Source of the DNA: Fimbriosthenelais zetlandica
Taxonomy: Eukaryota
Reading direction: 5' to 3'
Assembly (NCBI GenBank): GCA_977030845.1
Contig: OZ365115.1
Coordinates: 36,704,001-36,768,000 of the forward strand
Length of the DNA: 64,000 nucleotides
Position numbers and translations under genes: made by a program
The notes under the pieces: model-generated
The model's input: the letters and a program-made list of their open reading frames with translations, nothing else
Told to the model about the DNA's origin: nothing
The model's database searches: none
Part shown: piece after piece, positions 8,090 through 60,999 of the stretch
Layout: every line of letters begins with the position of its first letter
Numbering within the stretch: position 1 is the stretch's first letter

Positions 8090-8094
8090 ATCTC

Positions 8095-8133
<39 letters not shown>

Positions 8134-42143: not shown

Positions 42144-42266
42144 TTACTCCTCCTCTTCCTCCTCCTCTTCCTCCTCCTCTGCCTCCCCTTCCTCTTCTCC
42201 TTCCTCGTCTTTTTCTCCCTCTTTATGTTTCAGGGCGTCCTGTCCCCAGTCTGGTTTCTTGGGGCC
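42144..42266 (-). CDS. TnI: TnI last coding exon (GPKKPDWGQDALK...E11*)
   Basis: ttgttttcag acceptor, 123 nt, TAA at 42146-42144. KPDW motif and poly-Glu tail. Confidence 0.93.
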   Translation of the reverse strand, partial: GPKKPDWGQDALKHKEGEKDEEGEEEGEAEEEEEEEEEEE

Positions 42267-45200
42267 CTGAAAACAAAATTACAAAATTCATAAATCACTT
42301 CATCTCATCTCATCAAACATTTTCTGGCAAAAACAATCGCGAAAAACAATATGATTGGTTAAAAGCCACACTGTTCATTCTGTAAACTGTATAAATCAAA
42401 TTAGACTTGAGCAATTTACGATAATTGTAACCTAGCAATTTTGATTATCCAGACTCCCAAACATGATGTAAAAAACGACTATTACGCCCTATATGTGGTA
42501 TACAAGAGAGACTTTAACCATTAGGACCTACACAATAACAGAAACATAATGTTTTCAAATAAAGATAAAATTAAGTTGAAATTTAAATAAAATGTGACGT
42601 ACCTTATCCTCCTCCTCCAGCGCGAACTTGTCTTTGCCAGTTGACTTGAGTTGGTCGCGGAAGCCAAGTTTGGACTTGAGAGACTTCTTATCAAACTTGG
42701 CCAGTCTGGGAGACAATAGTGCAGGTGGTAATGATAATATAGTGACACAACCAAAACAAAGAGAACCCAAAGATCTCAGCAATGGCGGATAACCGGAATA
42801 ATTATAATACATGGGCATAGATGGCGGATAACCGGAATAATGATACATGGGCATAGATGGTGGATAACCGGAATAATGATACATGGGAATCCAGTCAATT
42901 AAACAATAAGTGTTGCGTTATGCATCAATTTTGAACCAAAGAAATCTGGGACTGTACATGTCATCAATAATGGAATTTTGAGGCGGGAGTGAATTCAAAT
43001 ATAGGGAATATGTCTTGCCATATAGGGCCTATAAAGCAATTTAGAACCTGTAGGAGGTGTCTGTATGAGCAAATAGGTATCTCTCATCATATATAGTGAA
43101 TTTTGGGCCCAAGAACTATTCAAAAAAACATTTGGACCCCTTCGTCCTGAATTAGTGGATCCGCCACTGCTAGGTATGCTGGAGAGGTTTTGGGTCAAAG
43201 ACATGAATAACTATTCTACAGGAAACCTGCCTTGGCCTATTATAGGACTGTCAGATGAACAATCTGAATATGCTAAACATGTTTTAGATCAATATCAATG
43301 ATATACTGTACAGAAAACAGATCTAAAATCTATTAAAAAAACACACTTTTCACTCGTGAATTTAAAACTGTATAGGCCAAAACAAATATTCTCTTAGCCA
43401 ACTAGACAATGGGTAAATAACAATGATTAATTAATAATAGACATTAACAACAATTAGAAACAATGATAACGATTATTATACAATCCAACATATGTACCTA
43501 CCCGACCTGCCCGTATGGTATGTAGGTATATTTGGATGGCGATCTTATAAACACTAAGACTTATCAGCTACTGTTTAGAAACTTTGGTGAAACTGGCTTA
43601 AGGTTAATGGTCAAGAATTATTATAAATATCCTGTTAATATTTGTGTATAATATAGGTTAATATTCTTATCGTATATCACGGAGATATGTGGGCATTTAG
43701 ATACGAAACTAACGTTAGATACGAAACTACGTTAAATCTGGACCATGGAGACTTGGCGCTTGGAGTAACTTATGTGTGCAAGGATCAAAAAGGACATTGA
43801 TGGAAAGAAAATGAGGTTCACTTGTCAATATATTTGTTTTGGGGAGAAATAAATTATGCAAAAGTGACTTTGGTTTTGCCAAACTTCTGCCATCTGCAAT
43901 AAGGAAAATAAGAAATTGCTGCAAATTCCATCAGTTCTGGTTTCCATTTAGTTTCGTATTAAATTGGTTGAAAAATCTGAGAATTTATGTTTTTAATCGT
44001 TAAGAAGGTACCCCCTGTTAATTAGACATAAATCTTTTGATGATTATTAATGTCATTAGACTATGAATTTTTCTAATTAATTATAGAAAAGTAAAGAATT
44101 AAAGAACGCCACAAACCATATTATTAGTTATCATGTTTGACCATATTATAATGACCTTGACACTGCTAGCAATAAAAGCATTGTATAGAGGAGAGAAGGG
44201 GAGAGAGAGTGACAGGGAGACAGAGAGAGGGGGCAGGGAGACAGACAAAGAGGGGGAGGCAGAGTGGGAGATAGAAAGTGTGAGAATGAAAGGAGAGACG
44301 AAGAGGGAGTTTGCAGGAGAGAATTGGAAGGTAAAAGAGAGGTAGATGGAGACAGAGTGAGATAGAGAAAGTGTGAAAGAGGTAGATGTATAGACGAGGA
44401 AAGAGAGGGAGTGAGACAGAGACAGGGATAGAGATAGAGATGAAGATAGAGGGCAGATGAGAGGGTAAAGGTTGAACCCTGATTGTCTGGTATACGTACT
44501 TGCTCTCAGTCTTGGAGACCTTCTTGAGTACAGGCTTAGCGCTGAAAAACAAGGACAAAACTTGAAAATATGTTTCAACTGGAATAATATAAAAGAGGAC
44601 AGAAAATGATCAAATCTCTCTACTAGAAGTCTATATCCTTTCAAGGAAGAAATCTCAGGAAACAGCTTCATTTTATTTAAATGTCGATGTATTTACTGAT
44701 AAAACGAATGAGTGTACTTACAACTTGCCCTTGATGTCGTTGACCTTGATGGTGAGCTCGTTCACCTAGCAAAATCAGATGATGAAAAATTAATAAAATG
44801 TTTATAATAAAATAATAATGTTAACTCATTTTTTACATTTCCTGTCATTCTAGTAAAGTCTATAGTGATATCTTCAATTCTTCAAAGCAGTGTACGACGA
44901 TCTTACTTGTAAACTACTCGTATTTGATACAACTTGTTGTAAATATTCTGATCTCATTACGTATAATGACAATATAGCATTAACATTCTGTTTATACAAC
45001 AGTAATCAGGAATATAAAAGAGTAAAATATCATTTGAAGTGTTATATAAGGGTGTGAGGTGACATGCTTAATATTTTATGTTAGTTTTGGCCAATAGCTA
45101 TAGACGCCTGAGCGAGCGCCAATCAGCAACCTCCAAACATGCACGTGACTCCCCACGTGACTGCCACGTGGTGCCCCATGCAGCATGGCTGGCGTGAGGC

Positions 45201-48200
45201 CAGACTTCAGGCAGAAGACATGTCCACGGTGACAAGATGGAGGCAGTGCAAACAAATATATCCTCAAAGATAAATCAATTATTGTAAATTTATCTTGATG
45301 ATTTTTTATCAGCAGAATTTACCTGGGAGGGCGACTGGTTGAAAATGCTCCAACACAATGATGAGCATCTTAAAGTACTTTAAACATGAAGCTTCTTTAA
45401 GGATTTAAGTGGAATATTTAGTAGATCAGCAGCCACAGTATGCAGGCGCCAGTAAAAGGACAGATCTTTATAGCTTTAAGTTCTGGATGTGAGACATCGT
45501 GCATTTGTGAAAAATCTGCTCAGAAGGAAGATCGATGTGTTAAAGAAACGATGAGTGAGCATGTCGATGACCTTGAGAAGGTCACGGCCGAATGTGGCCT
45601 GGTTAATACGTCATCTAAGCTCAATATATCATCAAAGCTTCAAATCACTAATGATAATTAACACCTACTATAGTAAGCAGAAACAAGCTGAATAGATGAA
45701 CACAGTAACAGGCCGGAAACAACGAGCGGCTGCTGGTAACATTGAAGTCTCATTATTTGTCGACGATGCCAAACTTGTGAGTTTAACAGCTATATTATTA
45801 TTATTAATCTACTAACAACTTGTTTATAACGTAAATGAATCTATATAGAAAATCTAATATTTATCCTAATAACTGACTAAATGTAAATTTGACCAACTCT
45901 ACAGTAACTGTGCACATAATACTGAACGTTAAATACTAAAAGAACATCAAAATTCCCACCGGTGTCTGGCTCAATATCACTTGTCTTTTTTGTTATAATT
46001 AATGTATATTTTTGATAATGTTTTGAATGGTTGGAAGCAGAACTACTGACTGGGCACCCAATTAGGTCAATACTCGAACTAACGACCACTAAATCTCTCC
46101 CTGACGATCTAAATATCTAGCCTGTTCCACTGAGCCTATTCTATTGTACTTTCTATTCATCCTTCTAATCTAAAAGTAATATTTTTCAGCTCTATATTGC
46201 TCTTCATAAGTCTAATTTGTATAAGTTTTCTATGTCATCACCTAGGTTAATGAGATGCCATGACAATTCAGTGACAGACTTTTGAGTCAGGTAATTCTAA
46301 ACATCTCTTTGAAAGTACAACACAAGAACTTTGACAAAAACAGAAAATTTTGACCATGGAACATTTCAGACATCCATGATACATAGACAAGAAAAGCAAT
46401 GAATTTAGAGGAGCAGATATGACAGGCAGATGTGCACAGACATAGACACTGACTGGATCAAGGACATTGTCAAGGTCAAATCAAGGTTGAATTACTGTGT
46501 AATTGTTTCTTCTAGAAGAAACTAGTGTCAATGTTTCCCCACATACGTATTCATGTCTTTCTAGGTTAAATTAATGTGGAAAATTAGTGTAACACCTTTT
46601 AGAGGTGTGTAAAAGCTAAGTATCTAGTGTAACACCTTGTGATAGGTGTGAGAAGCTGTGTAACACCTCTTGTAGGCGTGAAAAGGCTTTGAAATAATCT
46701 CAGGCGTGTATGAAGTGAAAGAATAAGTGTCATAGAGTAAAGATATAAGGGCAGTGGGGTGTTTTTTGAATGGAGAAAAAGCAAAATATCATCCAAGGAT
46801 AATGCTTTCTCACAGTCAGACAGACGTGCCAGGTTTACAAAGCAGCAAAAAACAAAGCCCTTCAAGTCTCATCGTCAAGACTTCACAGATGAAGACAGAC
46901 ATCCAGCAGTGTGGTCACTCAGTTGGTATATCTTGATTCTGATTCTGCAATCATGACATCCACACCAGCCATTTTGTTTCATCACAAAGCCAGAAAAAGC
47001 TATTGCAAAATCTCCTCATACATGGTTGGATGTCCGGAATAGACGGCCTTGGTGAGGGACGCACTGAGCAAGCAGTAAACCAGCCTACCTACCTTACCTC
47101 ACATACTTATATTACAAGCTAAGTCAGAGTGAGGGGCGCTGTCCCCAGCACCGAACTACAATGATGAAGCTTCAGCTTCAGCTTCCAGATTCTACTCCTT
47201 GCCTGTGTTCTATCCAACCACAAAGATTCCTTTGTGGGGTCAACGCGTAAAACAACAACTACCAGTACTAGGAAAAGTATAACAGTTGGTATAGACACAG
47301 GCGTCAGAGAGCGACAGACAAGGATCAGTGAAATCAGGCGCCAGGTCCCCGTGGTTATATTTTTTGAGATGTTTTTTTTATTTTTTTTCTCTACCTCGTA
47401 TTCCTGTCGTCTGATCTTCACTTCCCAGTCATATTTCTCCTCTTCTAAACGGCAGACCATGTCGTACATCTCTTTCACCTTACGCTCCAGATCGGCTGAA
47501 TTCATGGATATAACAACGGCCAAAAGACAGTTAGTCAACGTCTGGTACAATTACAGACAACAAAGGTGGTGAAATGACAACGAGGAGAAGGGAGAAATGA
47601 AGAGATTATAACATAGTGGGGCGTGGAGAGAAACAAAAAATACAAAACAAAAGTAAATCAGTCAACAACTGGTGAATGAAAAGGTGAACAGGTCAATCAG
47701 GGTCCACTTCCGGTCGTCAAGGACGCTGCAAGGTCAAGGTCGCTGCCTCGGCTTCCCATTGGTTGATTTCAATCACGTGTGTATCCATCTTGTGAGGGGA
47801 TGAGAGGGTTTGTAGTTAGACTGGAGGGACCTAGGGGGCGGGGAGGTTTGCAAAACAAAAAAGAGGGAGAAACCAATGAGTAGAGTATGTTTTTCGAACC
47901 TCAGCCTCCTGGGCCCTCATTTTCACCTCCACGTCGTACCTCTGCTCCTCCAGCTTCACGTAACAGTTGTACAGCTCCTTGACCTTCTTCTCCAACTGGT
48001 CTGCTCATTTCAAGGTCATTCAGTTAGACATCTCATAGCAACAACAGACTGACAATTATTCTATTCAAAAACAGGTTGAGAATAGCATTGTATGTGTCTA
48101 GATTTGAATCTAGAATGTTCCATAACAGGAGGGTGTCAACCAAAGTGAGATTCATGTCGGGGTAGGTTTGAGTAAAGTATGCTCTGTAGGCTTTCACTGA

Positions 48201-51200
48201 CATCTCTGAAAAGTTTAAGAATAAAGAAATCTTAAACTAAATCTCCTGGAAATAACAACTTGTGGATGATTAAGGCTTACACAGAACATACTGTACTCAA
48301 ATAATCAACATTCAAAGTGAGGGAAAGTCAAAGTGACCTTGACAATATTCAGAGACATTGTATTGCAATACTTCAGATGTTATTTAGATCAATTGCTTTG
48401 CATCTGCAAATGGTTCAAATTGTACAAATGTGAATATCCATCGTGAATATGTCCGAGTAGGTCTAGAGATCTTTATAATTGTAGAGGTCACTTTGTAATA
48501 ACCACATCATGGGTTATGAGGCTCACAGAACATTCTAGATTATGGTACAGTGCTTTCCCTATAGCGACCACAGTTGTGACTACCAAACTGACCTCTATGA
48601 AGTAAGTGGTCGGTTTAGGGAGTATTTTAAACTTACAAGAACGATTATAGGACCATACAGCTATGGTCGGATTAAAGGGGTGGTCTGTTTTGTGGTCGGC
48701 TATGGGGGAAGCACTGTACTTCAGTCATATTCTCACCACCTTACTCATATATTCAATTAAGATAATAATAATTTAGTGACTGTCCGCAGCAACGATTGGA
48801 CGAACCAAACAGATCATATAGATATAATGCCATGCAAATTTCAAGGAGTAGCAGAGTCCAGAGAGATTCAGATTGATTCTATACGAATAAGTTCAGTGTA
48901 ATTTTAAAATGGATGTCCAGAATATCAACTGGAAAACAATGAACATGTAAGAATAGGTGGTGCATGCACAGATGTTTACCTAGGCTAATACAAGGGTCTT
49001 ATCATGGAGGTCATAGGTTTATTAATTAAATTTAACAAAAATTATAACAAAAATTAACAAGGATTATAACTGCAAGAAACTCATTCAGATAATTGTGGTT
49101 GTAAAAGTAAATCAAAATTTTAAATTGTTGTCCGATGTTTGGGGTCAATTATTTATATTATAGCCTCATAATGTGACAAATATTTCATGGTCAACTCAAG
49201 CAAGGCTAACATGGTAAAAACATTCTGAATTTTAAATAAAAATGGTCTTAAAAATCATGCACATCAAAGTTGATGGATCAAAGAAATATTTCTAACGGAA
49301 AATGCAAACTATTCTTCATAATTTACATTGTATTTTTACTTTCATATCAACTGTAGGATATTGGGCTGGTAAGTGGTTGGAGCAGGTCTGGGTTGGTAAG
49401 GTATAGGTGCTAGGGTTTAGGTTCAACACAGGGAGGTAGGTGGGGGTAGGGTGAGTTGGGAATGGGGGCAGGTTTGCCAAGTGGGTGTGGGTTGGGTGTG
49501 GGTTGGGTAGGATGGGCCAGACTTGGTAGGGGTGTAGGGTATGGGTGTACGGTGTGGGGTTAGAGGGTTGGGTAGGGTGGGCCAGACTTGGTAAGGGGTT
49601 AGGGTGTGGGGTTAGGGGCAAACTATAGGCTCACACTGTGTACATGCACCGCCTACCTTGTCCTAGGCCTGAAATTTCAAGAGGGGGGACACGGGCATCG
49701 ATAATCTTCTTCTTGGCTGCTGCCTCCTCTGCTTGCTTCTTCTTCAAGTCCTCAGCGGCTTTTTGCATAATAAGTTGCTACAAGTTGAAAGCGGGTAAGT
49801 TCTGTGTTAGTCCTGTATTTTGACGTGATATTATAACTTAATACTTGTCTCAGATGAGCAAAGAGAACTGTGGAGGGCTTAGTGGCATAATGCCAACAGC
49901 AAGGGTACAAAAATACGACAATAATTATATTAAAATAAGCATATTTTTTAAATGTTAAACATCAAATTTACTCTCGTAACATTATCAACAGTTTTCAAAT
50001 GAAAGAATTATGTCTATTTTGTATCAAATCATTATGATTCTTTTTCTTCATAACAATAAGTTCATTAAATATCTAATTAAGTGAATTAGAATAGTTGTAA
50101 ATGAAAAGAATCATGCATATATTGCTAAAACACATGCAGTAAAACAAAACTCAACCATTTGTGTGTTGAAATAGCCTCTGTAAAGCCTGGAAAAACTGCT
50201 AAAACTACAAGCCTTTTCTGTGAATAGAAATATAGTATCGGACAGCAATCGGACAGAGCCGGATAGAGAATCTGGAGTAATGTCTGGTCCCACCTTTGGT
50301 GAGGGCCTCCAGGTTTAGAGGAGGTACCCGTTGGTCCAGGTACAGCTTTCTCTCTCTCAGTTTCTCATCTTCCTCAGCTTTCAGATCAGCCATGGCTTTT
50401 TCCAGAATCACAGACTAAAAACAGGAGGAAAAAACATGCAGGAAAACCATGCCATGAACACTGGGTGCGGACTAATCTTACTGAAAAAGGGTGACGTGCG
50501 AGGGGCAGATCAACTGAGGTTCTAAAGGGGATTTTAAGACAGAAATCCTGTGATTCTTGTCTTAAAAGGTATACATTCTAAGTCATAAACCATTCATCTC
50601 AAACATTATATAGATCAACAATTTGTTTTCATTCTAAGAATGATTTTATATGACAGGAGCAGGGGGTAAAGATCCCAAGGTCATTGAAGGTCATGCAGAA
50701 ATACATCTAAAATAACTCTAAATGATCTAAAAACATGCAGACAGGAACTATTAAATAAATATCCCAACCAAATGTCATTTGGCATGGATCCAGGGGGCAC
50801 TAAAAAGCAGCTTCAAACTTCTAAATCTGATTTCAAGATGTTTCAAGAATGTTCTTACCTTGAGAAGTTTCTTCTTCTCAGGAGTGAGTCCTCCCAGACC
50901 CCTCCTCTTTCCGCCTTTTTTCTGCAAATCAAAGAATGAAACAATGATTTTTCACAGAATCAAACATTTTAAAGAACATATCTTGGCCACATTGCATGTA
51001 ATAGATGTTAGATATGCATGCAACCCATTCATGTCTGGAGCAGAGGTGGTGACCGCCATCTTGGATGACGTCATTGAATCACCATGGAAACCACCGGAAG
51101 TGTAACCTGCAGCCATTGATAAGGCGATAACTTTCAACTTTACTTCTCCACCAGACTTTATCTGACCTCAGCCTCTGATTCTAGACTGGGTACAGCCATT

Positions 51201-54200
51201 AGATTTTTGCTAAGATGATTAGGCCTAATTCCCTGAAATATAAAGTTTGATAAATGTGATCATACCTCTTCATCATGGCCGTTTTCCTCCACGTGATCGT
51301 GAGGTGAAGGTCGTGCTAAATCCTACAGTAACAACATGCAACAACGACATGCAACAAGCTGTAACAACATCGACAACAGCGGTAACGTTCATTATAAATT
51401 CATGCTGAGTAAATGTAAGGATTCTTAAAGGAAATAATTCAAAGATCCCAAGGCACACATACAGTGGAGTCTCACTAAAGTGACCACCAGAAGGATCAAA
51501 CTGGTCATATAGTGAGATGGTCGGTTTGCTGAGTATGTCTTAGTCGTGTTAAATCTTTTGGTTCTGACCATTTAGTGGTCACTTACTGAGATGGTCGCTT
51601 TTCTGACCATTTAGTGGTCGGATAGTGAGTTGGTCGGTTTAGTGAGGTGGTCATTGAGTGAGACTCCACTGTATTAGTGTGGGTTTCACTCTTACTCTCT
51701 TCATCTCAGACGCAGCTAGCGTTCCTTCTCTATCTCTGCTCTCTTCCAGTAAGAGTCGTTCCTGTCTCTCTTTCTCTCTCGCTACTCTCTGAGCTTCTCT
51801 GTCTTGTCTATCTTGTTCTCTTCGTGCTGCTCTCTCCGCCTCACGGTCAGCCAGTTCTCTTTCTCTCTGTCCTTCTTCTTCTCTTCGTTTGTCTTGCATT
51901 TTTCTCCTCCGTTCTTCCTGTTCCTCCGCCCAGTTAGAGTCGGTATTGTTGGGTGTTTCTTGTAGTCGTTCTTGTCTTGCTCGTCTCCGAGCTTCCCGGT
52001 CCAGCTGAGCGCAATAATTACAACATCAACTCATGCAAGGAACACACAACAACATATCATGCAAAATACTCCCGATTTAAAGCAATTTTCTGTGTATTTT
52101 TGCTTGAAACTGACCTTTTTAGAATAAGAAATATAGTAATACGGGGAAGTGATTCCCTGATTCTGACCTCTCTTTTTCTCGCCCGTTGGTCTTCTTCTCC
52201 CCCTTCTTCCTCCTCTTCCCCATTCTCTCCTCCGTTCATTCCCCTGCTCTTGTCTTCTCTTTCTCTTTGTCTCCTCGTTTGTCTGCTCATTTCCTTCTTC
52301 TCTGCCTCCTCTCTCCTCTTATTTTCCTCTTGCTCTAGTCTGATTCTTTCTGCCTCTTCCTCTTCTAGCCGTTTGATTTCCTCCTCGTCCGCTAGTCGTT
52401 GTCTTTCCTCCTCCTCTTCCTCTTTTCTCAGCCTCTCTTCTTCTTGCCTATATAACTCCTCCTCTTCCTCTTCCTGCCTCTGACGTTCTTCCTCTTCTCT
52501 CCTCTTCCTTCTTTCTCGCCTTCTATTCTCTTCCTCTTCCTCTATTCTCCTTTGCTCCTCTATTCTTTCCTTCTCTTCCTCTTCAGCTATCCTTCTTTCT
52601 TCTTCCTCTTCCTCCAACCTCAATCGCTCTTCTTCTTCCTTTCTCTTTCTTTCCTCTTCCTTCTTTTTCCTGGCCTGCTCCTCCCTTTCTATTCTCTTTC
52701 TTTCTTCTTCCTCTTCTTCCAACCTTAATCTCTCTTCTTCTTCCTTTCTCTTCCTCTCTTCCTCCTTCTTTTCCCTGGCTTCCTCCTTTTCTATTCTCTT
52801 TCTTTCCTCTTCCTCTTCTTCCTGTCTTCGTTGCTCCTCCTCTCTTTTTCGTTCTGCCTCTTCTAGTTTCCTTTGCTCTTCTTCTGCTTTTCTTTCTCGT
52901 TCTTGTCTTTCTATTTCTTCTTTTCGTCTTTCCTCTTCCTTTGTCCTCTCTTCCTCCTCTTCCCCCTCTTCTCTTGCTTTAGATGTATAGTTTCTGTTAT
53001 TATTGATTTCCTCCTGCTCTCGTTCTCCCTCTTGCTCTTCCTCTCCTCTTCTCCTCCGGCGGTAAGTGTTGGGTGAAGAGCTGTGACTTGCCTTCATGAA
53101 GGACATGCAAAGATCACAGCACACCATGCAAAAATATATCACAACAAACGACAAACCTCCACCGGACAATCTTCTATAGTAGGGTACCCCAGAAATACTC
53201 AAAAGTACAACTAATTCTCAGTGAAAAATTGTTTGGATAATTTCATTCCAATTCAAAAATCTCGTATAAAGTATGCTTTACCAGCATTTCAACCAAAATT
53301 CTATCAATTTCAAAATGTGATACGAAAGTTCCAAAAGGTTAGTCAAATATTTTAAATGAAAGAGCCAAAGAATAAAGATCAAATCCCAAAGTTGATAAAT
53401 TAGTCATGAGGATCTACCTCCTCGCCATTTTCCGTCTTCTCCACGTGATTGGAGGAGGAACCATTTTCTTCTTCCTCTTCCGGTTCCTCTAGTTTCCGGT
53501 TCCGGCGTGAACGCCAGGACGCCAGGGAACTAGAGGGCGTAGTCTCATCTGTGACGTCAGACGCCGGCGTCTGTACGCCAGAAATCATGCAAAAAATACA
53601 TGCAAAAAAACTCATGCACCATGTACATAAAAATACATGTTTTAGTAGAAAATTGTGGGCATATTCAGAGGTGGTTAGTTACAAAAGGTCTTTTATGTAC
53701 AATTGTACATGACATTGTATGTAAAGGGTTGGTAAATATTGAGGTATTTTGAAAAATGAAAAAACATTTGGGAGTGAACACACATCTATTCCATGATGAA
53801 GACCTGATCAAAGTTTTTCTTGATGACAAACATGAGTCATATGTAGGATATTCACAAAGATAACCACAGATTTAAGATAATCATAGATTTATATAATATA
53901 ATATACATGGCCACCTACTGTACCAGTCTGATGAACACTCAGTCAATATGTAGTGTTTGCTTACCTCGCCCCTGAAAGATAAATAAAGAAGACATTAAAA
54001 TCTAACATTATATTCAAATAAGACAATTAATCACAAGGACTAATCGTAAGTTACTACAATATAAATTAATTATGAGATTTGAAGACATTGAAGACATTCG
54101 AAGTCTTTGATATTGTTTTAGAGAGTCTACTTTCAAAGTTATTATGCAATTTTTATGCAATTTATATGCTAGAACGGTTGCTTTGGGTTTGACATTAATT

Positions 54201-57200
54201 TCATGCAGGATTAGTTTGGATTAAGACATGAAGAATGCGGGACGTGCCTTAGCCTGGCCTCGCGGTTAGCACGACGTTCATGACGTCGTCTCTCAATGTC
54301 GACGTCAATCTGACTGGAATCTGCCGCTCTGATTAACAAACAAAAAAACAAACACAAACAGGGGTGAGAAAACCACATGCAGGTCTACAAACAACAAACT
54401 GCTTAAAGGTGCACACACACTAATCACATTCTCTATACGATAGGGCCGACTAGCAATACAAAGTTCACACAAAGTCCTTGTAATTTTAACAGACCGTTAT
54501 ACCTAGGTAAGGCTAACTACTGACACAATTACAATCATTGGATGCCATTTGAAATGGGGGATCGGATGGCGCAAATTGGAGAATCGGATTAGTGTGTGGG
54601 CACCTTTAAATCTAATGCAATTTCCTGGCTGTATAATTTGAGTTTGAGAGATAGGCCTTAAGGCAATGGTTTGAATTCGAACGATTCTATTTCACATATC
54701 TTAGCAATCATTTAGTAGATTTCAACCACAAATTGCGAAAATAGAAATCTAGGTACACATGCATGGGTAGAACAAAAACTTTAAAACACAAATATTATCT
54801 TATTTTAACATTTTTCTCTTAGTTCCTGGCGTTGCATTTCATGTTCATTGACATACTTCATTTGGGGTAATATTTCATTTAGTATTAGTTATTTTATAAG
54901 ACTTTGGACATGGTAATTATAATTTATTTCATTATTAGCGATATTTTCATGGATGTGTGTAGTTAAGAGCTGATATTTGAGGCCGTATCCATGGTATTTG
55001 CTGCCTGGTAACGGTATCCATGGTAACCTGGTAACGGGTCTGAGCCGGGACTTCACTTATAGAGCAGTCAGGTATCAGGTTACCTTACCACAGAAACAGC
55101 CGGCCTACAGGCTAAATATATACCGGGCAGAGAGCAGCTCACAGAGCCATGAGCTGGAGGCCGGCAAGGCTTCACGGGCCGCGGGGGGGGGGGGGGGGGG
55201 GTACTACCCGGCGGAATTATTATACATTCAATATCTAATGATGACCTCAAAGGAGCTTAAGGAATATATAAATGTGTGAAAGAAAAATGTTATCTCATAA
55301 TCCGGTAGAAACCATCCTATAACTGAAGGGAAGGGGAAGGGGGGAGGGGCGACATTCCATTTATGAAGGAATATGTATGGCTCGACTGTGGCTCAAGCAA
55401 TACTTGATGGAAAGCTCAAATAGTCAAAAGATTTTTTAATATTTCTGTGAAGGTCGGTTGTCGCCCCCTTCATGGATGAAATGCCTTTCACCAATACAGA
55501 TTTCCTAATGCAAGAAAAGATAATATCTCGATTTTGCTCGCTTTAGACCCAAGAAACGTCCTCAAAAGTTACCCTGTAACTGAGGAAATGTAGCAAAGGC
55601 TTCCTATAAGTCTTTCCAATAGACTTTAAAGTAGTTTTTCTTTCTTTTCAATAATATAATTCCCTGATATAAGTTTAAATCACTCCATAACACAAACACA
55701 CGATCATGCAATGGAGGAAAATGTGCATTCCGAGGAAAAACGAGGTAAAAGTTGACTTACATTTTGATGAATTTGAGAAGGTAACAGCCAGATAGCGGTG
55801 AAGATTTAGACGGAACGAGTTAGCGCCCCTGAGCTGCCCGATACTGGTAGGTGGATGTAGACGATACCCTCTCCTAATCCACCCTCCCACCCCTCTAATC
55901 CACCCCACATAGACCCGCCCACACACCCAGCCAATCACAGCCAGCCTTACTCACCTCTATGGTGGTTTAACATGGGACTAGCCGAGCCGCGGCTGTAAGA
56001 GAGCCGCTGATTGGTGGAGGAGTTGAGGGTCAGATTGAGTTACTCAGGGATGGGTCAGGAGCAGCTCAAAATGTTAACTCGTGGATTCACGAGCTCGTGG
56101 CTTCCACTCGTGGTCTCTCCCCCGGCTACCTCAACCCGACCCACAGACCCCCCAGCTTTCACAGACATACAATCTCACTTTCTCTTATATTTTTTGAATA
56201 TTTGTATAATAAGGCCTATTTACAGTTTTGCGAGTCGTTCCTCGCGTTCCCGCCGGCGACGCGCGATGCGTTCACTAATGTCGTCATCGTCATCCGGCGT
56301 CGACATGGCCGCCCTGAAAATTATAGCAAATAAAATTAATTTGATTTTCATCCCGTGACCTCTATTTTATTATACTTTTGCTTTATTAGAAGCATGACCA
56401 TTAAGCCTTAAACACACATAGGCGATTTTCCCAAGCGATGCAGCTCGAAAGTATTATTATATTACAATACATTATGTGTATTTAAGGCAGAAATACCTAC
56501 AGAAATTATTGATTTTTTCACCGGGGGGGACAGGGGCATAGACCCTATGAGAAAATATGTTTTTTGGCTCCAAAAGCTATTTAAATCACAAGGAGGAGGG
56601 GACCCAGAGCCCCTGGACGCCCCCCCCCCCCCCTCAACATTGGAACCGTTCCTTGACATAGAGAGAAGGGGTTTAGGTAGGTTATAAATATTTTTAGATG
56701 CCAACTCGATACTACAAACATGGCAGCCAAGCTCGACAGATTCATCACAGATCATTCTGCCGGGTCAACTTCTCCCACCGATGGTGAGAGAGGCATCTTA
56801 TCTGAAAGCGGTTGTTGACCTGTTAAAAACCGTTTAAAAAAACAATTTTAACATTTAAAAGTCGATCAGTTGTAAGTGGGTGCTTTTTCTAACCTTTATA
56901 AATTTACCCTAACCTCCCCACCCCCACACATACCCAACCCCTCTCTCTCCTCTCTCACCCTCCTCTCAAAATATCAACTCCAACATTATAGACTTGCATT
57001 CGTCCCAAAGTTATTTCGGTTTGTCCCAGTCAGGAATTAGTTCATTTATCAGAGACTGGAGCAAGTCTCTCGGCCTCAACTTCCCCCCCCCCCCCCCACC
57101 TCTCACTCACCCATACACGCGATCACAGGTAACTAGGACTACCTGGTCTGGTTGCTATGGTTACCTAGAATAGAACAAACTGAGAAGAGAGTCTGAGGAG

Positions 57201-60200
57201 AGGTGTGTAGGGGGCTGAGCCAAAAACCCGCCCTCAAGGCTGGTGGGGGCAGGGAGGAGGGGGGTGCCTGAACACTCGACCAAGAATAAGGATCAATCAA
57301 AGTGCTCTATATTATAGGCCTATTATATCTTTGAACTTCTTTCAAAATATTTATAAAATTTTACTAATATTTTAAAGGTATTTTCGTCTGACTAAATCTG
57401 TTGAGGGTAAGATTCTTTTCCTCAAAATATATGTGTTGAGTGGAATGAAAATGAGAGGGAGATGGGAGAGATCAAGAGAGAGAGAAAGAGAGAGGATCGG
57501 GTATAGAGAAAGACAGTCACATTGGGCATAGAGAAGATAGGGAAAGACAGGGAAGAGACGGAGAGATAAATTGAGAGGCGTGTAGAGATGTTGAGATAAG
57601 AGTATAGGCTATAATGCTGGTACACAGTATATGATATGATATGAGTTATGAATATTTGACCAGGAGAGTGGCGGTGCTCTCTCTGGAATGTGAACAATCT
57701 CAGCTTAAAGTTCACCCCATCACACACCTGTCCCTTAAGCCATTGCTCCACCTCTGCGATTTAGCTAGCGACAAGAGTGAAGATTTTCGTTCCTTGGTCG
57801 ATGACTCCTTTCTACAGTTATCTCCCTCCCTCCCAGGCCCTCCTCTCTAATTCGCCCCCTTCTACAACTATCTCCCTCCTCTCTTCATATCTCTCTCTCT
57901 CTGTCTATCTACCTCAATCTCTCTCCCTCTGTCTCTCCCTGTCTCTCTGTCTCTGTCTCTGTCTCTCTCGCCCTCCTCAGTTGACTTGGTCGATGTGTCG
58001 GTCAGTGGGTGGGTTTTTCACTAAATGTGGGCCTAATTTATCAGACATTCCCACATATAAACATGTAGGTCCCTGATTGGCAGGTTCAGCAGGTCAGGAA
58101 AGGTGGGAGTGGGAAGCGATCTGACTTCACAGGCAACGAAAAGGGTCAAACTTCTCACAAAATGAGAAACAGAGCTGGTCGAAATCTAGATCAACAATTT
58201 ATGGGAAACTTGGTCATTGGGCGTTTTCTAGGAAACTATAACATGAATGAGGTCTACAAGAGCTCTTAAAACATCGCTTGGGGGGGTAGATCCACTGTGG
58301 TCTTAAAGGCAATTGTTAAGACTTATCTAGGGTAAGAATAACCAAAATCCCTGATTGTATCTAGGAGTAAATTGGCTGCGTTGCACAACAATGGTTTAAC
58401 CTATGGTTGTACAATGGCCTGAATATTAGTAATTCCGACCTGCCAACCTCCGTGCATGACATTTAATTTCCTATTTCACCTCGTAATCAGTAATTTCTCG
58501 ATCTAAGTCTCACAGTCGGAGTATCTTGACTCAATCATTTCACCAATCTTGTTGCCAATGCCTGTTTTATCACTCTGGCTCTGGTCCAGTATTCCTGATG
58601 ATATCAGAGTGTATTTCTATAGTAGGAGGTCGTCACTGGGGGAGCTCAACCATGCAGGCTCGCCGGGAACGACATGCTTCGTTACCATATGCTCAAAGTT
58701 TTCATGCTCGATGTTTAAATTACATTAAAAATCAGCAAAATAAATGTAAACTACACACGAGGAGCGAGTATCACAAACTAACGTGTCTGCATTCCTTATA
58801 TTCAAAATAAATTATATATATTAGTCAAAATGTTGAGCGAAAAGGGGATAGAATAAAGTGAAGTAATATTAGGAAATGTGAAAGCACTTCCTGGACTAAG
58901 GTATTGAAGGGAGGAAAAGTAAAAACTTTAATTGTTTGAAAAGATTTTTGTGGGATATTGATTAAAACGATTATCAGGTGTGGTTTTTGGAAAATTGCCC
59001 GGATGTGTGTATTAGCATGAGTACAAACGTGAAACGCTGACAGACACGTCGCCATGGTTACCAGGATTGTTGATGTTAGAGAAGGAGGTCATCTATAGAA
59101 AGGTTGCCATGGTAATGCCTCCAGCCATTCACCTCAATCACTACACAACGCTCGCTTACCATGGAATTTACATCTTCTAGGATCTCTCAAAATCTCTCTC
59201 TTTCCTCTCTCGCTCTCTCTCGCTCTCTCTCTCTCTCCCTCTCTCCCTCTCTCTCGCTCTCTCTCGCTCTCTTCATCTATCTATCTCTTCTCCCTCTCTC
59301 TTACCCACTCTTTCTATCTATCTCTCTTCTTCTCTATCTCTTTCACGCCGTCCATTTCTCTTTCTCTTTCTCCCTCCCTCTCTACCTTTTATTTCCTTAA
59401 AAGTTTGTGACATGTTTCCTATTGAATTCTAACATTCCGATGTTAGAATGTGTCAGATTGACTCAGTAAATCTTTGTGATGTTTAAAAGAAATGTGTCCA
59501 GTACACAATGTGCATTACTTGGTGCATTACTAGGTTAGTAAATGAAGTGGAAGTTTTACAAGCTACAGCGCCCCCGGCGACCACTCTTAACAACTCACAA
59601 TGTCATCAAGGGTTAACTTTTAAAGTGATTTAAATGTAAACACGGGGTTACAAGGGTTAAAGGTGGGATGGGAAGGCAGGTGGGAGAATGAGGATTTTAG
59701 TGAGTAGTTCTACATCTGGAGATCCAATGTAAAGGATTATGTCAAGAGGGGGGGGGGTCAGATTGGCTTCCCCCATCCCTTCCAGAACATTGGATGAAAA
59801 TGGTTTCACTCAAATAGCATTTTTCTACAGCTACCTCCCTCTCTCTCATAACCTATTCGATCTCTAATTCGCCCCTTTCTACAGCCATCTCCCTCCCTTC
59901 AACACCCTTCTGTCCAATTGGCCCTTTTCTACTGCTATCTCCCTCTCTCTCATACCCTTCTGTCCAATTCTCCTATCCTACCCAGCAATTTTTCTTCTAT
60001 TTTTTCTCATGCTCAGCTCACTTCACAAAATCCAAAACTATTGCAACACTATCCCTCATATAGCCTAGTTGAGGGACTTCCCAGTAGGACAATATAGTTC
60101 CACACCTGGTCCAAGATGTCCAGACACGATCGATACATTTTCTACATGAATTCTCAACCTAATTCTCCCCATTCAGCCTGATATTGAACCCCCAGGTGCA

Positions 60201-60340
60201 GCAGGGATGGATGTTTATTTTTACAGTCAGTTATTTTCATCTTTTTGTTATTTTTATCAGGCAAACATTCTGACTTACTCCCTCGCTTGGCGAGCTAGCC
60301 TCCGCTGCTCCCTCCTCGCTTCCAGATCCGTCACACTCAT
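42144..60340 (-). CDS. TnI: Troponin I with very long optional E/R/K-rich (caldesmon-like) N-terminal extension; about 759 aa longest, about 228-278 aa shortest
   Basis: Exons in consistent phase: 60340-60279, 56313-56224, 54328-54248, 53971-53965, 53570-53418, 53091-52168, 52004-51696, 51322-51266, 50921-50859, [50414-50294 or 49777-49657], [48000-47900 or 47495-47395], 44765-44722, 44541-44500, 42705-42603, 42266-42144. Sum is 2280 nt. Protostome TnI hallmarks: GLGGLTPEKKKLLK, LIMQKAAEDLK, LEEEKYDWEVKIRRQEYE, VNELTIKVNDIKGKFAKPVLKKVSKTESK, FRDQLK, KPDW. Confidence 0.95.
42603..42705 (-). CDS. TnI: TnI exon (LAKFDKKSLKSKLGFRDQLKSTGKDKFALEEEDK)
   Basis: gtctcccag acceptor, GTACGT donor, 103 nt, phase 2 to 0. 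Confidence 0.94.
42781..42887. repeat. 36-bp tandem repeat x3 (ATGGCGGATAACCGGAATAATGATACATGGGCATAG)
   Basis: Adjacent near-identical units with no spacers. Confidence 0.9.
44190..44462. repeat. GA-rich microsatellite block
   Basis: Degenerate (GA)n directly downstream of the TnI donor at 44500. Confidence 0.85.
44500..44541 (-). CDS. TnI: TnI exon (AKPVLKKVSKTES), inhibitory region
   Basis: gtttttcag acceptor, GTACGT donor, 42 nt, phase 2 to 2. Confidence 0.95.
44722..44765 (-). CDS. TnI: TnI exon (VNELTIKVNDIKGKF)
   Basis: ttttgctag acceptor, GTAAGT donor, 44 nt, phase 0 to 2. Confidence 0.95.
45100..45175. promoter_or_regulatory. Intronic cluster of three CACGTG E-boxes with two CCAAT boxes
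   Basis: CACGTG at 45142, 45154 and 45165. CCAAT at about 45090 and 45119. Confidence 0.4.
47395..47495 (-). CDS. TnI: TnI mutually exclusive exon X1 (DLERKVKEMYDMVCRLEEEKYDWEVKIRRQEYE)
   Basis: 101 nt, phase 1 to 0, gaattcag acceptor, GTAGAG donor. Confidence 0.93.
47900..48000 (-). CDS. TnI: TnI mutually exclusive exon X2 (QLEKKVKELYNCYVKLEEQRYDVEVKMRAQEAE)
   Basis: 101 nt, phase 1 to 0, same length as and paralogous to X1. Weak acceptor (atgagcag) and donor (GTTCGA). Confidence 0.88.
49420..49620. repeat. G/T-rich degenerate minisatellite (GGGTGTGGGGTTAG, GGGCCAGACTTGGTA)
   Basis: Directly visible, starting about 35 nt downstream of the Y1 donor in transcript orientation. Confidence 0.8.
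49657..49777 (-). CDS. TnI: TnI mutually exclusive exon Y1 (QLIMQKAAEDLKKKQAEEAAAKKKIIDARVPPLEISGLGQ)
   Basis: 121 nt, phase 0 to 1, aacttgtag acceptor, GTAGGC donor. Confidence 0.93.
50294..50414 (-). CDS. TnI: TnI mutually exclusive exon Y2 (SVILEKAMADLKAEEDEKLRERKLYLDQRVPPLNLEALTK)
   Basis: 121 nt, phase 0 to 1, same length as Y1, shared I..KA..DLK and D.RVPPL. Confidence 0.92.
50859..50921 (-). CDS. TnI: TnI exon (KKGGKRRGLGGLTPEKKKLLK)
   Basis: gatttgcag acceptor, GTAAGA donor, 63 nt. Start of the conserved TnI domain. Confidence 0.95.
51266..51322 (-). CDS. TnI: TnI cassette exon (DLARPSPHDHVEENGHDEE)
   Basis: actgtag acceptor, GTATGA donor, 57 nt, phase 0 to 0. Confidence 0.8.
51696..52004 (-). 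CDS. TnI: TnI cassette exon (LDREARRRARQERLQ...ASEMKR)
   Basis: gcgctcag acceptor, GTAAGA donor, 309 nt, phase 0 to 0, open E/R-rich frame. Confidence 0.85.
52168..53091 (-). CDS. TnI: TnI giant cassette exon, 308 codons, ER/K single-alpha-helix-like
   Basis: Within ORF 52057..53202. Phase-0 acceptor atgaag|GCAAGT at 53091 and GTCAGA donor after 52168. Contains an internal duplication of about 35 aa (EEEERKRIE.EE.AR.KKEEERKRKEEEERLRLEEE x2). Confidence 0.82.
53418..53570 (-). CDS. TnI: TnI cassette exon (TPASDVTDETT...TENGEE)
   Basis: cgtacag acceptor, GTAGAT donor, 153 nt, only the phase-0 frame is open. Confidence 0.82.
53965..53971 (-). CDS. TnI: TnI 7-nt microexon GGGCGAG (phase 2 to 0)
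   Basis: Strong ctttatttatctttcag acceptor and GAG|GTAAGC donor. It is the exon needed to join the phase-2 upstream exons to all phase-0 downstream exons. Confidence 0.85.
54248..54328 (-). CDS. TnI: TnI 81-nt exon (AADSSQIDVDIERRRHERRANREARL) ending at a GC donor
   Basis: tttgttaatcag acceptor, open phase-2 frame, AAG|GCACGT donor restores phase 2. Confidence 0.75.
54407..54605 (+). mobile_element. Full-length 199-bp Kolobok-like MITE
   Basis: TTAA at 54403-54406 and 54606-54609. TIRs AGGTGC(A/C)CACACACTAATC / GATTAGTGTGTGGGCACCT with an AG 5' terminus. TTAA target duplication with RR termini is characteristic of Kolobok DNA transposons. Confidence 0.8.
56224..56313 (-). CDS. TnI: TnI exon with internal in-frame ATG at 56306 (AAMSTPDDDDDISERIARRRREREERLAK)
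   Basis: aattttcag acceptor, GCGGCCATGT strong start context, GTAAAT donor in phase 2. Confidence 0.88.
57805..57970. repeat. Dispersed/tandem unit CTCTAATTCGCCCC-TTCTACA-C-ATCTCCCTCC plus CT microsatellite; related copies at 59820-59965
   Basis: The same about 40-bp unit occurs at about 57848 and 59863, with further diverged tandem copies. Confidence 0.7.
59195..59395. repeat. CT/CGCT microsatellite
   Basis: Directly visible. Confidence 0.9.
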
Positions 60341-60965: not shown

Positions 60966-60975
60966 CCAAATATGG
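60966..60975. promoter_or_regulatory. Perfect CArG box CCAAATATGG
   Basis: Matches the CC(A/T)6GG SRF consensus, about 0.5 kb upstream of the TnI ATG exon. Near an X-box half site (CTATAGCAAC) and a CTCF-like CAGGGGGCGCCA (about 60894). Confidence 0.5.
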
Positions 60976-60999
60976 CCGCCTACAAGATATATGACGAGA

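What the first reader, a model, noticed from the sequence alone, without database searches (positions are those of the whole stretch)
51266..60340. A troponin I carrying an optional caldesmon-like module (about 759 aa in the longest form)
Seen: about 550 aa precede the TnI core. Four phase-0 cassettes (153+924+309+57 nt = 481 aa) can be skipped without frameshift. The 924-nt exon holds about 220 residues of ER/K helix, roughly 33 nm at 0.15 nm per residue. The next exon begins LDREARRRARQERL. Established: human caldesmon has AARERRRRARQERL in its N-terminal myosin-binding region, a DDEAAFLERLARREERR segment (compare DDDISERIARRRRERE at 56.2 kb) and an alternatively spliced central single alpha helix distinguishing h- from l-caldesmon. 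The caldesmon-related LSP1 sits between human TNNI2 and TNNT3. E/R-rich extensions are known in molluscan TnI but, to my knowledge, are much shorter. Inference: one gene may switch between an ordinary TnI and a TnI that tethers thin to thick filaments like caldesmon, and it may mark an evolutionary link between caldesmon/LSP1 and the TnI-TnT locus.
Basis: partly seen in the sequence, partly recalled or inferred. Interest (0 to 1): 0.8.

Follow-up and report, generated by a model that had tools for sequence, protein, structure and literature searches.

The report
Troponin I with optional long charged helix
An invertebrate (probably annelid) troponin I gene carries four in-frame extra exons that could add a 481-residue, highly charged, mostly helical arm to this muscle regulator; the exons look real, but the proposed kinship with caldesmon is not supported.

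Summary
On the minus strand, a troponin I (TnI) gene runs from ATG 60340 to the stop at 42144. It contains four AG/GT-bounded, phase 0-0 exons of 153, 924, 309 and 57 nt. With them the protein is 758 aa; without them, 277 aa.

The exons look like real coding sequence:
- The 924-nt exon has strong 3-base periodicity and no stop codon, where 9 are expected.
- It holds a 240-residue Pro/Gly-free stretch that is 80% charged and predicted helical (about 36 nm).
- Each cassette has 2-3 UGCAUG motifs within 60 nt upstream of its acceptor, which suggests coordinated Rbfox-type splicing.
- A second species (locus L036) has the same layout: two E/R-rich phase 0-0 exons preceded by UGCAUG. Their sequences cannot be aligned with ours.

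No RNA data could be obtained, so "optional" remains an inference.

The caldesmon link is not supported:
- Pfam Caldesmon does not match the cassettes or anything in the genome.
- Two large protein searches found no homologue.
- The 11/14 motif match is unremarkable once the choice of motif is allowed for, and it is absent from L036.

I read this as a fast-evolving, composition-conserved ER/K extension of TnI. It is analogous to h-caldesmon's spliced helix, not demonstrably homologous. The scan has not recorded this feature on other DNA.

The parts
60279..60340 (-). Exon e1: ATG plus MSVTDLEARREQRRLARQAR(E). Ends in phase 2 with donor GTAAGT.
   Evidence: The open frame continues 59 codons upstream and an acceptor-like site lies at about 60451, so the true start is not fixed.
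56224..56313 (-). Exon e2: AAMSTPDDDDDISERIARRRREREERLAK(L). Phase 2 to phase 2.
54244..54328 (-). Exon e3: AADSSQIDVDIERRRHERRANREARLRH, the E/R-rich helix directly preceding the core in the short form. Its donor is weak.
   Evidence: An alternative is a GC donor at 54248 joined to the 7-nt microexon at 53965-53971.
53418..53570 (-). Cassette 1, 153 nt (51 aa), phase 0-0. A Ser/Thr/Pro- and Glu-rich linker.
52168..53091 (-). Cassette 2, 924 nt (308 aa), phase 0-0. E 42%, R 22%, K 9%.
   Evidence: period-3 signal 11.2, 0 stops against 9.3 expected; AlphaFold2 helices 10-134 and 143-283, mean pLDDT 82; in-frame 105-nt tandem repeat at 52593-52822.
52243..52962 (-). ER/K segment with single-alpha-helix character: 240 Pro/Gly-free residues (protein residues 174-413), about 36 nm at 0.15 nm per residue.
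   Evidence: (80% charged, 5-19% hydrophobic).
51696..52004 (-). Cassette 3, 309 nt (103 aa), phase 0-0. E/R/Q/A-rich; begins LDREARRRARQERL.
   Evidence: P of no stops 0.02; AlphaFold2 single helix 2-102, pLDDT 90; no homologue or paralogue.
51266..51322 (-). Cassette 4, 57 nt (19 aa), phase 0-0. An acidic/His linker.
53586..53618 (-). Three UGCAUG motifs 16-43 nt upstream of the cassette 1 acceptor, within a 13-nt tandem repeat.
53104..53130 (-). Two UGCAUG motifs 13 and 34 nt upstream of the cassette 2 acceptor.
52032..52063 (-). Two UGCAUG motifs 28 and 54 nt upstream of the cassette 3 acceptor.
51335..51353 (-). Two UGCAUG motifs 13 and 26 nt upstream of the cassette 4 acceptor, within a 13-nt tandem repeat.
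50859..50921 (-). First TnI core exon: KKGGKRRGLGGLTPEKKKLLK. Phase 0-0.
42144..50414 (-). Rest of the TnI core. Mutually exclusive pair A1 50414-50294 / A2 49777-49657. Mutually exclusive pair B1 48000-47900 / B2 47495-47395. Inhibitory-region exons 44765-44722 and 44541-44500. Exon 42705-42603. Last exon 42266-42144, with a poly-Glu tail and the stop codon.
   Evidence: the A2/B2 form is 80% identical over 173 aa to the spliced ORF in L008.

Best explanation
The stretch is the 5' half of a lophotrochozoan-type (probably annelid) troponin I gene.

Between exon 3 and the first core exon lie four genuine, symmetric coding exons. Exon 3 encodes the short E/R-rich N-terminal helix. Together the four exons insert 481 residues:
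- an acidic Ser/Thr linker;
- a 308-aa exon whose central 240 residues are an ER/K-type single alpha-helix, about 36 nm long;
- a 103-aa E/R/Q/A-rich helix;
- a short acidic linker.

The block is most likely included or skipped as a unit under control of (U)GCAUG-binding Rbfox-type factors. That would give a 758-aa long TnI and a 277-aa TnI from the same promoter.

The insert behaves as a fast-evolving module that is conserved in composition and length rather than in sequence. It grew partly by in-frame 105-nt tandem duplication. It would place a long, stiff, strongly charged arm on the N-terminus of TnI, where it leaves the troponin core. It is therefore an exaggerated, splice-regulated version of the N-terminal extensions already known in invertebrate TnIs.

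Shown: exon structure, coding character, helix propensity, the motif clusters, and a parallel in a second species.
Inferred: alternative splicing, the single-helix state, and any binding partner.

The resemblance to h-caldesmon (an optional helix of about 34 nm) is functional analogy and shared composition, not demonstrable homology.
For: - Exon bounds, phases and the assembled 758-aa and 277-aa frames.
- Coding signal of the 924-nt and 309-nt exons against non-coding purine-rich controls in the same window.
- A 240-aa Pro/Gly-free stretch, 80% charged and 5-19% hydrophobic.
- AlphaFold2 predicts helix over c924 residues 10-134 and 143-283, and over c309 residues 2-102.
- Nine sense-strand UGCAUG motifs lie in the four 60-nt windows upstream of the cassette acceptors, where about 0.06 are expected. 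The window total is 51 against 29.3 expected, with 0 of 100 shuffles reaching 51.
- The cassette acceptors have poor pyrimidine tracts, as regulated exons often do.
- There is an in-frame 105-nt repeat.
- Locus L036, from another species with the same A1/A2/B exon set, has E/R-rich phase 0-0 exons of 669 and 201 nt upstream of the core. UGCAUG motifs lie at 1990, 2041 and 2814, just upstream of their acceptors.
- An ENA contig carrying a 78%-identical B exon has same-strand ORFs of 306 aa and 142 aa at similar offsets.
- TnI identity: Pfam Troponin matches the core exons, and the core is 80% identical to expressed short TnIs of relatives.
- Precedents: a roughly 310-aa N-terminal extension in sea-urchin TnI (PMC5341096) and Rbfox1 control of Drosophila TnI (PMC8742874).
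Against: - There is no transcript evidence. No sequencing run was listed for this genome.
- No protein containing the 309-nt exon is in a 1.84-billion-sequence library, so public annotation does not include the long form.
- All full-length TnI mRNAs of relatives recovered from metatranscriptome-like contigs are short forms. They start M-G/A-E-K-K at the core exon and carry no extension.
- Other related genomic loci (L085, L072, L012) show no E/R-rich exons in the 2-9 kb upstream that is available.
- The ER/K stretch has a net acidic excess (112 acidic against 81 basic) with runs of 5-6 Glu, which could weaken a single helix.
- AlphaFold2 was run on single sequences and cannot tell a single helix from other helical states.
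- The AAG acceptor of the 924-nt exon and the e3 donor are weak.
- An Rbfox gene was not located (inconclusive).
Confidence: 0.6

Rival explanations
1. The module is a true caldesmon relative. Its E/R-rich ends bind myosin, so the long TnI tethers thin to thick filaments. The locus would then record a common origin of caldesmon/LSP1 and the TnI-TnT cluster.
For:
- An optional helix of about 36 nm parallels the roughly 34-nm spliced helix of h-caldesmon (PMC13102872).
- In vertebrates, CALD1, LSP1 or LAD1 lie between TNNI and TNNT paralogues, also in lamprey and hagfish (PMC9825255).
- No separate caldesmon gene was detected in this genome, and caldesmon is regarded as a vertebrate novelty (PMC5167519).
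- Old immunological reports describe caldesmon-like proteins in mollusc and earthworm muscle (cited in PMC12040844 and PMC5167519).
Against: - Pfam Caldesmon gives no match at E<=10 for any cassette, for e2 or e3, or for L036's cassettes.
- phmmer and the word-indexed searches returned no caldesmon hit: none for c309, and six marginal unrelated proteins for c924.
- The motif P-value is not corrected for picking the best of several hundred caldesmon windows.
- The second motif has P of 0.02-0.04.
- The motif order is reversed relative to caldesmon.
- The motif is absent from L036 (P=0.24). L036 instead resembles a different caldesmon stretch that I recalled from memory, and ours does not resemble that stretch (P=0.33). 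This is the behaviour expected of low-complexity R/E sequence.
- Our cassettes and L036's do not align with each other, so a signal surviving to vertebrates is unlikely.
- The module lies 5' of the TnI core, not between TnI and TnT.
- There is no caldesmon-type C-terminal actin/calmodulin-binding domain.
Confidence: 0.08
2. The four exons are constitutive in transcripts that start at e1. The ordinary short TnI would then come from a different first exon or promoter spliced straight to the KKGG exon. On this view the switch is made by promoter choice, not by cassette skipping.
For: - Every complete TnI mRNA of relatives in the metatranscriptome-like contigs starts M-G/A-E-K-K immediately before the core exon. 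All use A2/B2-type exons, and none carries an e1-e3-like extension.
- A possible minimal first exon (ATG|gtaagc) lies at 59162 in intron 1.
Against: - The clusters of UGCAUG directly upstream of each of the four acceptors are the signature of regulated cassette exons.
- All four exons and both flanking exon ends are in phase 0, so skipping is frame-neutral.
- No convincing M-G-E first exon was found between 50.9 and 64 kb.
Confidence: 0.2
3. The cassettes are not expressed coding exons. They would be purine-rich simple sequence in intron 3 that happens to be open, with chance splice-like sites.
For: - The window contains several purine-rich, ER-like open stretches that are clearly non-coding, for example 60955-61374, 21400-21950 and 7854-8348.
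- No annotated protein or RNA supports the exons.
Against: - The period-3 signal is 11.2 for the 924-nt exon and 3.7 for the 309-nt exon, against 0.2-2.6 in the controls.
- The 924-nt exon has no in-frame stop where 9.3 are expected (P<5e-4).
- Four successive AG/GT-bounded units are all in phase 0-0.
- The tandem repeat unit is a multiple of three.
- UGCAUG clusters are positioned at each acceptor.
- L036 has the same phase 0-0 E/R-rich exons.
Confidence: 0.05
4. The long arm acts mainly through charge. Its roughly 130 Glu residues would serve as a low-affinity Ca2+/Mg2+ reservoir next to troponin C, as proposed for the Glu-rich C-terminal extension of insect troponin T. It would not act as a mechanical tether.
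For: - The 924-nt exon is 42% Glu with a net acidic excess.
- TnI here and in relatives also ends in a run of 12-30 Glu.
- The insect TnT precedent rests on my own knowledge (Cao et al., J Biol Chem 2020) and was not checked here.
Against: - The regular alternation of acidic and basic blocks, and the absence of Pro/Gly over 240 residues, point to a structural helix rather than a floppy polyanion.
- No experimental data exist.
Confidence: 0.07

Closest known systems
Sea-urchin troponin I (Hemicentrotus pulcherrimus HpTnI, about 52 kDa; PMC5341096)
   Same: It is a TnI whose troponin motif is preceded by a very long N-terminal extension of about 310 aa. Several bands on blots hint at isoforms.
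   Different: Our extension reaches 558 aa. It is built from discrete symmetric exons with UGCAUG clusters and contains a 240-aa ER/K helix. The C-terminal part here is the ordinary protostome type. The HpTnI sequence itself was not available for comparison.
Molluscan (Akazara scallop) TnI with an E/R-rich N-terminal extension of about 130 aa (Tanaka et al. 2005, as cited in PMC5341096)
   Same: It has an E/R-rich N-terminal extension ahead of a conserved core, and that extension was reported to be dispensable for basic regulation. Our short 277-aa form, with its 79-aa extension, is of this kind.
   Different: The cassette block adds a further 481 aa, including a single-helix-type rod. This was not compared at sequence level, because no scallop sequence was available from the tools.
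h-caldesmon versus l-caldesmon (CALD1; PMC13102872)
   Same: An alternatively spliced central ER/K single alpha-helix of about 34 nm is flanked by R/E-rich helical regions on a thin-filament regulatory protein.
   Different: There is no Pfam Caldesmon match, no caldesmon C-terminal actin/tropomyosin/calmodulin domain and no conserved motif. The module is attached to a troponin I core, and its position relative to TnI/TnT differs from that of vertebrate CALD1/LSP1.
Drosophila wupA (TnI) alternative exons and Rbfox1 regulation (PMC8742874)
   Same: A single TnI gene makes fibre-type isoforms through an optional N-terminal exon and mutually exclusive core exons. Rbfox motifs are present, and Rbfox1 affects TnI isoforms.
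   Different: The fly's optional N-terminal exon is short and Pro/Ala-rich (my own knowledge). Here the optional part is about 480 aa of ER/K-rich sequence, with motif clusters at each acceptor.
ER/K single alpha-helix (SAH) domains of myosins, drebrin and others (PMC5378345, PMC5812594)
   Same: The composition, the alternation of charged blocks, the lack of a hydrophobic seam, and the predicted uninterrupted helix.
   Different: At 240 residues it is at the long end of the range. It has a net acidic excess, and it sits on a troponin subunit. I found no published case of that in the papers searched.

Membership tests
Troponin I | Match to the Pfam Troponin (PF00992) profile in the core | tested here: met
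   exon A1 scores 23.4 bits (E 7.7e-5) and B1 19.7 bits. B2 scores 31.3 bits, over the cut-off. The only other Troponin hit in the genome is the neighbouring TnT.
Troponin I | Inhibitory region and C-terminal region collinear with expressed TnIs | tested here: met
   The sequence GKFAKPVLKKVSK...KPDW is present. The assembled core is 80% identical over 173 aa to the spliced ORF of L008, and 54-79% identical to 16 others.
Caldesmon/LSP1 (Pfam PF02029) | Profile match to the Caldesmon family model | tested here: not met
   No hit at E<=10 for the cassettes, e2 or e3, or for L036's cassettes. No candidate anywhere in the genome. That search also hit none of the 14 control genomes, so it says nothing about whether the family is absent.
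Caldesmon/LSP1 (Pfam PF02029) | C-terminal actin/tropomyosin/calmodulin-binding domain | tested here: not met
   The C-terminal 200 aa are a troponin I core.
Caldesmon/LSP1 (Pfam PF02029) | Conserved N-terminal (myosin-binding) sequence | tested here: inconclusive
The match is not conserved in L036 (P=0.24). The caldesmon sequence itself could not be obtained from any tool.
Caldesmon/LSP1 (Pfam PF02029) | Alternatively spliced central single alpha-helix | tested here: inconclusive
   A long ER/K helix on a symmetric exon is present. Splicing was not observed, because no runs were listed. This feature is analogous only.
ER/K single alpha-helix (SAH) domain | High E/R/K content with i to i+3/i+4 opposite-charge pattern, no Pro/Gly, no hydrophobic seam | tested here: met
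   240 residues, 80% charged, hydrophobic fraction 0.05-0.19, and a pair score of 1.0-2.1 against roughly -1.1 to 0.9 in the rest of the protein.
ER/K single alpha-helix (SAH) domain | Predicted continuous helix | tested here: met
   helices 10-134 and 143-283, with pLDDT mostly 85-96; the 309-nt exon product is helical over residues 2-102.
ER/K single alpha-helix (SAH) domain | Monomeric, stable helix in solution | not testable with these tools
   This needs circular dichroism, ultracentrifugation or SAXS on the recombinant segment.
Rbfox-regulated cassette exons | (U)GCAUG clusters in the introns next to symmetric exons | tested here: met
   2-3 motifs lie within 13-54 nt upstream of each of the four acceptors. 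L036 shows a similar enrichment, 40 against 15 expected.
Rbfox-regulated cassette exons | Observed tissue-dependent inclusion or skipping, and dependence on an Rbfox protein | not testable with these tools
   No sequencing run was listed. A Fox-1_C search of the genome found nothing, which is inconclusive.

The most novel reading that the evidence does not exclude
In a subset of this worm's muscles, the long TnI isoform uses its roughly 36-nm ER/K rod and R/E-rich helices to bridge thin filaments to myosin or to neighbouring troponins. It would do in protostomes the job that caldesmon does in vertebrate smooth muscle. It might also be the 'caldesmon-like' antigen reported in annelid and mollusc muscle. 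In that case the vertebrate CALD1/LSP1/LAD1 genes, wedged between TNNI and TNNT, could descend from such a troponin-locus module.
Probability: 0.08. Interest if true: 0.85.

Novelty: new variant of a known kind. Interest (0 to 1): 0.45.

Why it matters
If the long form is expressed, it would be, as far as I could find, the largest troponin I described. It would also be the first troponin subunit carrying a long ER/K single alpha-helix. Every troponin along the thin filament (spaced about 38 nm apart) would then bear a stiff, charged arm of about 36 nm that splicing could add or remove.

That would give invertebrate muscle a new way to tune thin-filament regulation, or contacts between filaments, from a single gene. 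It would also offer a natural parallel to the h-/l-caldesmon switch.

The two-species comparison is a clear example of an exon that is conserved in phase, composition and splicing signals while its sequence has diverged beyond alignment.

The caldesmon-origin idea remains an open but testable question, because CALD1, LSP1 and LAD1 do sit inside vertebrate TNNI-TNNT clusters.

Tried and rejected
- **RNA evidence.** Two run searches (5.7-kb and 1.4-kb queries) listed no run, so read laying could not be used.
- **Homologues of the 309-nt exon.** phmmer against 1.84 billion representatives gave 0 hits. The word-indexed search gave 316 candidates, none at E<=10. The own-genome search found only the exon itself. 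The ESM Atlas gave no usable hit. The PDB gave one chance hit at E 0.31.
- **Homologues of the 924-nt exon.** The search returned six marginal, unrelated proteins. PDB hits were other charged helices: SEC3, a Dot/Icm substrate and apoA-I. The Atlas gave nothing.
- **Similarity to TnT.** A composition-corrected BLAST of the extension against TnT-region ORFs found only the known core similarity.
- **Internal Ka/Ks.** A comparison of the two 105-nt repeat copies was spoiled by a 1-codon indel and was dropped.
- **Checking the quoted caldesmon peptides.** I searched the paper library for them and found none.
- **Missing papers.** Barnes 2016 and Cao 2019 are not held.
- **Rbfox gene.** A Fox-1_C search of the genome found nothing, which is inconclusive.
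- **Alternative first exon.** A search for an M-G-E-type first exon found nothing convincing.
- **Steps not taken.** I ran no complex prediction, because I do not claim binding. I did not run a fold search on a bare helix, because it would be uninformative.

Full report
**What is there.**
The finding lies in the 5' half of a minus-strand gene. The gene starts at ATG 60340 and ends at a stop at 42144. Its 3' half is an ordinary protostome-type troponin I:
- Pfam Troponin matches exons A1, B1 and B2.
- The inhibitory region (GKFAKPVLKKVSK), a KPDW box and a poly-Glu tail are present.
- The core assembled from my exon model is 80% identical over 173 aa to an intron-less ORF in a metatranscriptome-like contig (L008). 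It is 54-79% identical to 16 others.

A troponin T gene follows on the same strand at about 14-29 kb. These are the only Troponin-family matches in the 447-Mb assembly.

**Check of the observation.**
The four cassettes are exactly as described. They lie at 53570-53418 (153 nt), 53091-52168 (924 nt), 52004-51696 (309 nt) and 51322-51266 (57 nt). Each is open, bounded by AG and GT, and a multiple of three.

Joined to e1, e2, e3 and the core, they give 2277 nt, or 758 aa, with 558 aa ahead of the KKGGKRRG exon. Leaving them out gives an in-frame 277-aa protein.

Purine-rich DNA is naturally poor in stop codons, and this window has several non-coding ER-like open stretches. I therefore tested coding character directly:
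- The 924-nt exon has no stop in frame, where 9.3 are expected from its composition (0 of 2000 shuffles stop-free). The other two frames have 15 and 7 stops.
- Its 3-base periodicity is 11 times background. The 309-nt exon scores 3.7, and six non-coding purine-rich controls score 0.2-2.6.
- Part of the exon is an in-frame 105-nt (35-aa) tandem repeat.

Weak points:
- The e3 donor is CAC|GTCCCG.
- The 924-nt exon has an AAG acceptor.
- The open frame continues upstream of the ATG, with an acceptor-like site near 60451.

**The protein module.**
Residues 174-413 (window 52962-52243) are 240 residues without Pro or Gly. They are 80% charged (112 acidic, 81 basic) and only 5-19% hydrophobic. Blocks of E alternate with blocks of K/R.

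AlphaFold2, run on single sequences, predicts helix over residues 10-134 and 143-283 of the 924-nt exon product (pLDDT mostly 85-96). It predicts one helix over residues 2-102 of the 309-nt exon product, with pLDDT 90. At 0.15 nm per residue the central stretch would span about 36 nm, close to the roughly 34 nm quoted for the h-caldesmon helix (PMC13102872).

Monomeric helix behaviour is not shown, and the net acidic excess is a caveat.

**Evidence that the exons are regulated cassettes.**
On the sense strand, UGCAUG occurs 2-3 times within 13-54 nt upstream of every one of the four acceptors:

| Cassette | UGCAUG positions (window) |
|---|---|
| 57 nt | 51335, 51348 |
| 309 nt | 52032, 52058 |
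| 924 nt | 53104, 53125 |
| 153 nt | 53586, 53599, 53613 |

The window holds 51 copies against 29.3 expected, and no shuffle reached 51. Nine copies in 240 nt compare with about 0.06 expected, which I calculate as a Poisson P of order 1e-17. Two of the clusters sit in 13-nt tandem repeats.

(U)GCAUG is the Rbfox site. Rbfox motifs flank muscle-specific exons, and Rbfox1 acts on Drosophila TnI (PMC8742874). The cassette acceptors also have poor pyrimidine tracts.

Together with the uniform phase 0, this makes coordinated inclusion or skipping the most likely behaviour. No RNA could be examined, because no run was listed.

**Other species.**
A pattern scan of metagenome contigs returned 80 TnI loci. 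One of them, L036 (contig JAAUXT010128751.1), has the same A1/A2/B exon set and poly-Glu last exon. About 4.5-5.5 kb upstream of its core exon it has two E/R-rich exons of 669 nt (2054-2722) and 201 nt (2861-3061). Both are AG/GT-bounded and phase 0-0. UGCAUG motifs lie at 1990 and 2041 before the first exon and at 2814 before the second.

BLASTP finds no alignment at E<=100 between our cassettes and L036's. The module is therefore conserved in position, phase, composition and flanking motifs, but not in sequence. That pattern fits a spacer or rod, not a sequence-specific binding domain.

Three other observations limit the picture:
- Other loci (L085, L072, L012) show no such exons in the 2-9 kb upstream that is available.
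- All complete mRNAs of relatives are short forms that begin M-G/A-E-K-K at the core exon and use A2/B2-type exons.
- The long form, if made, is therefore probably a minority or tissue-restricted isoform. The ordinary short TnI may arise from another first exon.

**The caldesmon claim.**
- Pfam's Caldesmon model gives no hit at E<=10 on any cassette, on e2 or e3, or on L036's cassettes. It finds no candidate in the whole genome. That last search also hit none of the control genomes, so it does not show the family is absent.
- phmmer of the 309-nt exon against 1.84 billion representatives found nothing at E<=1e-3.
- Word-indexed searches found no relative: none for c309, and six marginal unrelated proteins for c924.
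- The exon has no paralogue in the genome.

I could not obtain a caldesmon sequence from any tool, and the quoted peptides occur in no held paper.
- LDREARRRARQERL matches the first at 11/14. This beats global, block and motif shuffles at P of 3e-4 to 1.6e-3. That is the probability for one pre-chosen 14-mer, whereas the peptide was chosen after the fact from several hundred windows of an R/E-rich protein.
- The second peptide gives P of 0.02-0.04.
- The two matches are in reversed order relative to caldesmon.
- Similar R/E/A/Q strings recur in e1, e2 and the end of the 309-nt exon.
- In L036 the first peptide has no counterpart (P=0.24). L036 instead resembles a different caldesmon N-terminal stretch that I recalled from memory (10/16, P=0.004), and ours does not resemble that stretch (P=0.33).

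Different species hitting different parts of caldesmon is what shared low-complexity composition predicts. It is not what descent predicts.

The extension shows no composition-corrected similarity to the neighbouring TnT either.

**What remains of the evolutionary idea.**
The literature confirms that CALD1, LSP1 or LAD1 lie inside vertebrate TNNI-TNNT clusters, including in lamprey and hagfish (PMC9825255). Caldesmon is regarded as a vertebrate novelty (PMC5167519). An origin of caldesmon at the troponin locus is therefore a reasonable question.

Here, however, the module lies 5' of the TnI core rather than between TnI and TnT. I saw no ORF of 90 aa or more suggesting a gene in the 29-42 kb interval. 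The sequences evolve too fast for the present data to decide. I give true homology or tethering about 8%.

**Verdict.**

The closest known cases are the roughly 310-aa N-terminal extension of sea-urchin TnI (PMC5341096) and the shorter E/R-rich extension of molluscan TnI. This is a new variant of a known kind. It is of moderate interest until expression is shown.

Noticed in passing
window 53965-53971 (minus strand), with 54244-54248: A 7-nt sequence, GGGCGAG, is flanked by an excellent acceptor (tttatctttcag) and donor (gtaagc). If e3 instead used the GC donor AAG|GCACGT at 54248, this microexon would restore phase 0 (...ARL-R-G-E).
   Followed up: partly
window 50435-50440 and 49643-49648 (minus strand): A UGCAUG lies 21 nt upstream of mutually exclusive exon A1, and another lies 9 nt downstream of exon A2. 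An Rbfox-type switch that skips A1 and includes A2 together with cassette skipping would produce this layout. Relatives' short mRNAs do use A2/B2-type exons. This overlaps the scan's sibling notes s1-217065 and s1-217103.
   Followed up: partly
window 60341-60517 (minus strand): The reading frame stays open for 59 codons upstream of ATG 60340, and an acceptor-like site (ttttgttttcag|G) lies at about 60451. e1 may therefore be an internal exon, and the true start is uncertain.
   Followed up: no
window 59160-59162 (minus strand): An ATG is followed directly by gtaagc in intron 1. It is a candidate minimal first exon that would give M-KKGGKRRG..., like the M-G-E-K-K starts of relatives' short TnI mRNAs. 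This is speculative.
   Followed up: no
L007, L008, L015-L018, L024, L055, L071, L073, L078 and others: Metagenome-collection contigs carry complete, intron-less TnI ORFs of about 195-220 aa with long poly-Glu tails (12-30 E). These are evidently transcripts of marine invertebrates, and they are useful as expressed references for lophotrochozoan short TnI.
   Followed up: partly
L036:5210-6842: Two long same-strand ORFs (351 and 257 aa) sit in the TnI intron between the E/R-rich exons and the core. They look like an inserted mobile element. I did not examine them.
   Followed up: no
window 14400-18320 (minus strand): Troponin T exons (for example ...KRAILAQRIQPLDISGFD...EKYDLEKRF...) lie downstream of TnI on the same strand. 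TnI and TnT are the only Troponin-family hits in the 447-Mb genome.
   Followed up: partly
window 60955-61374, 21400-21950, 7854-8348, 57821-58017, 59137-59428: These purine-rich simple-sequence tracts translate into RERE-like open frames but show no 3-base periodicity. They served as useful negative controls, and they are a trap for exon calling in this genome.
   Followed up: yes
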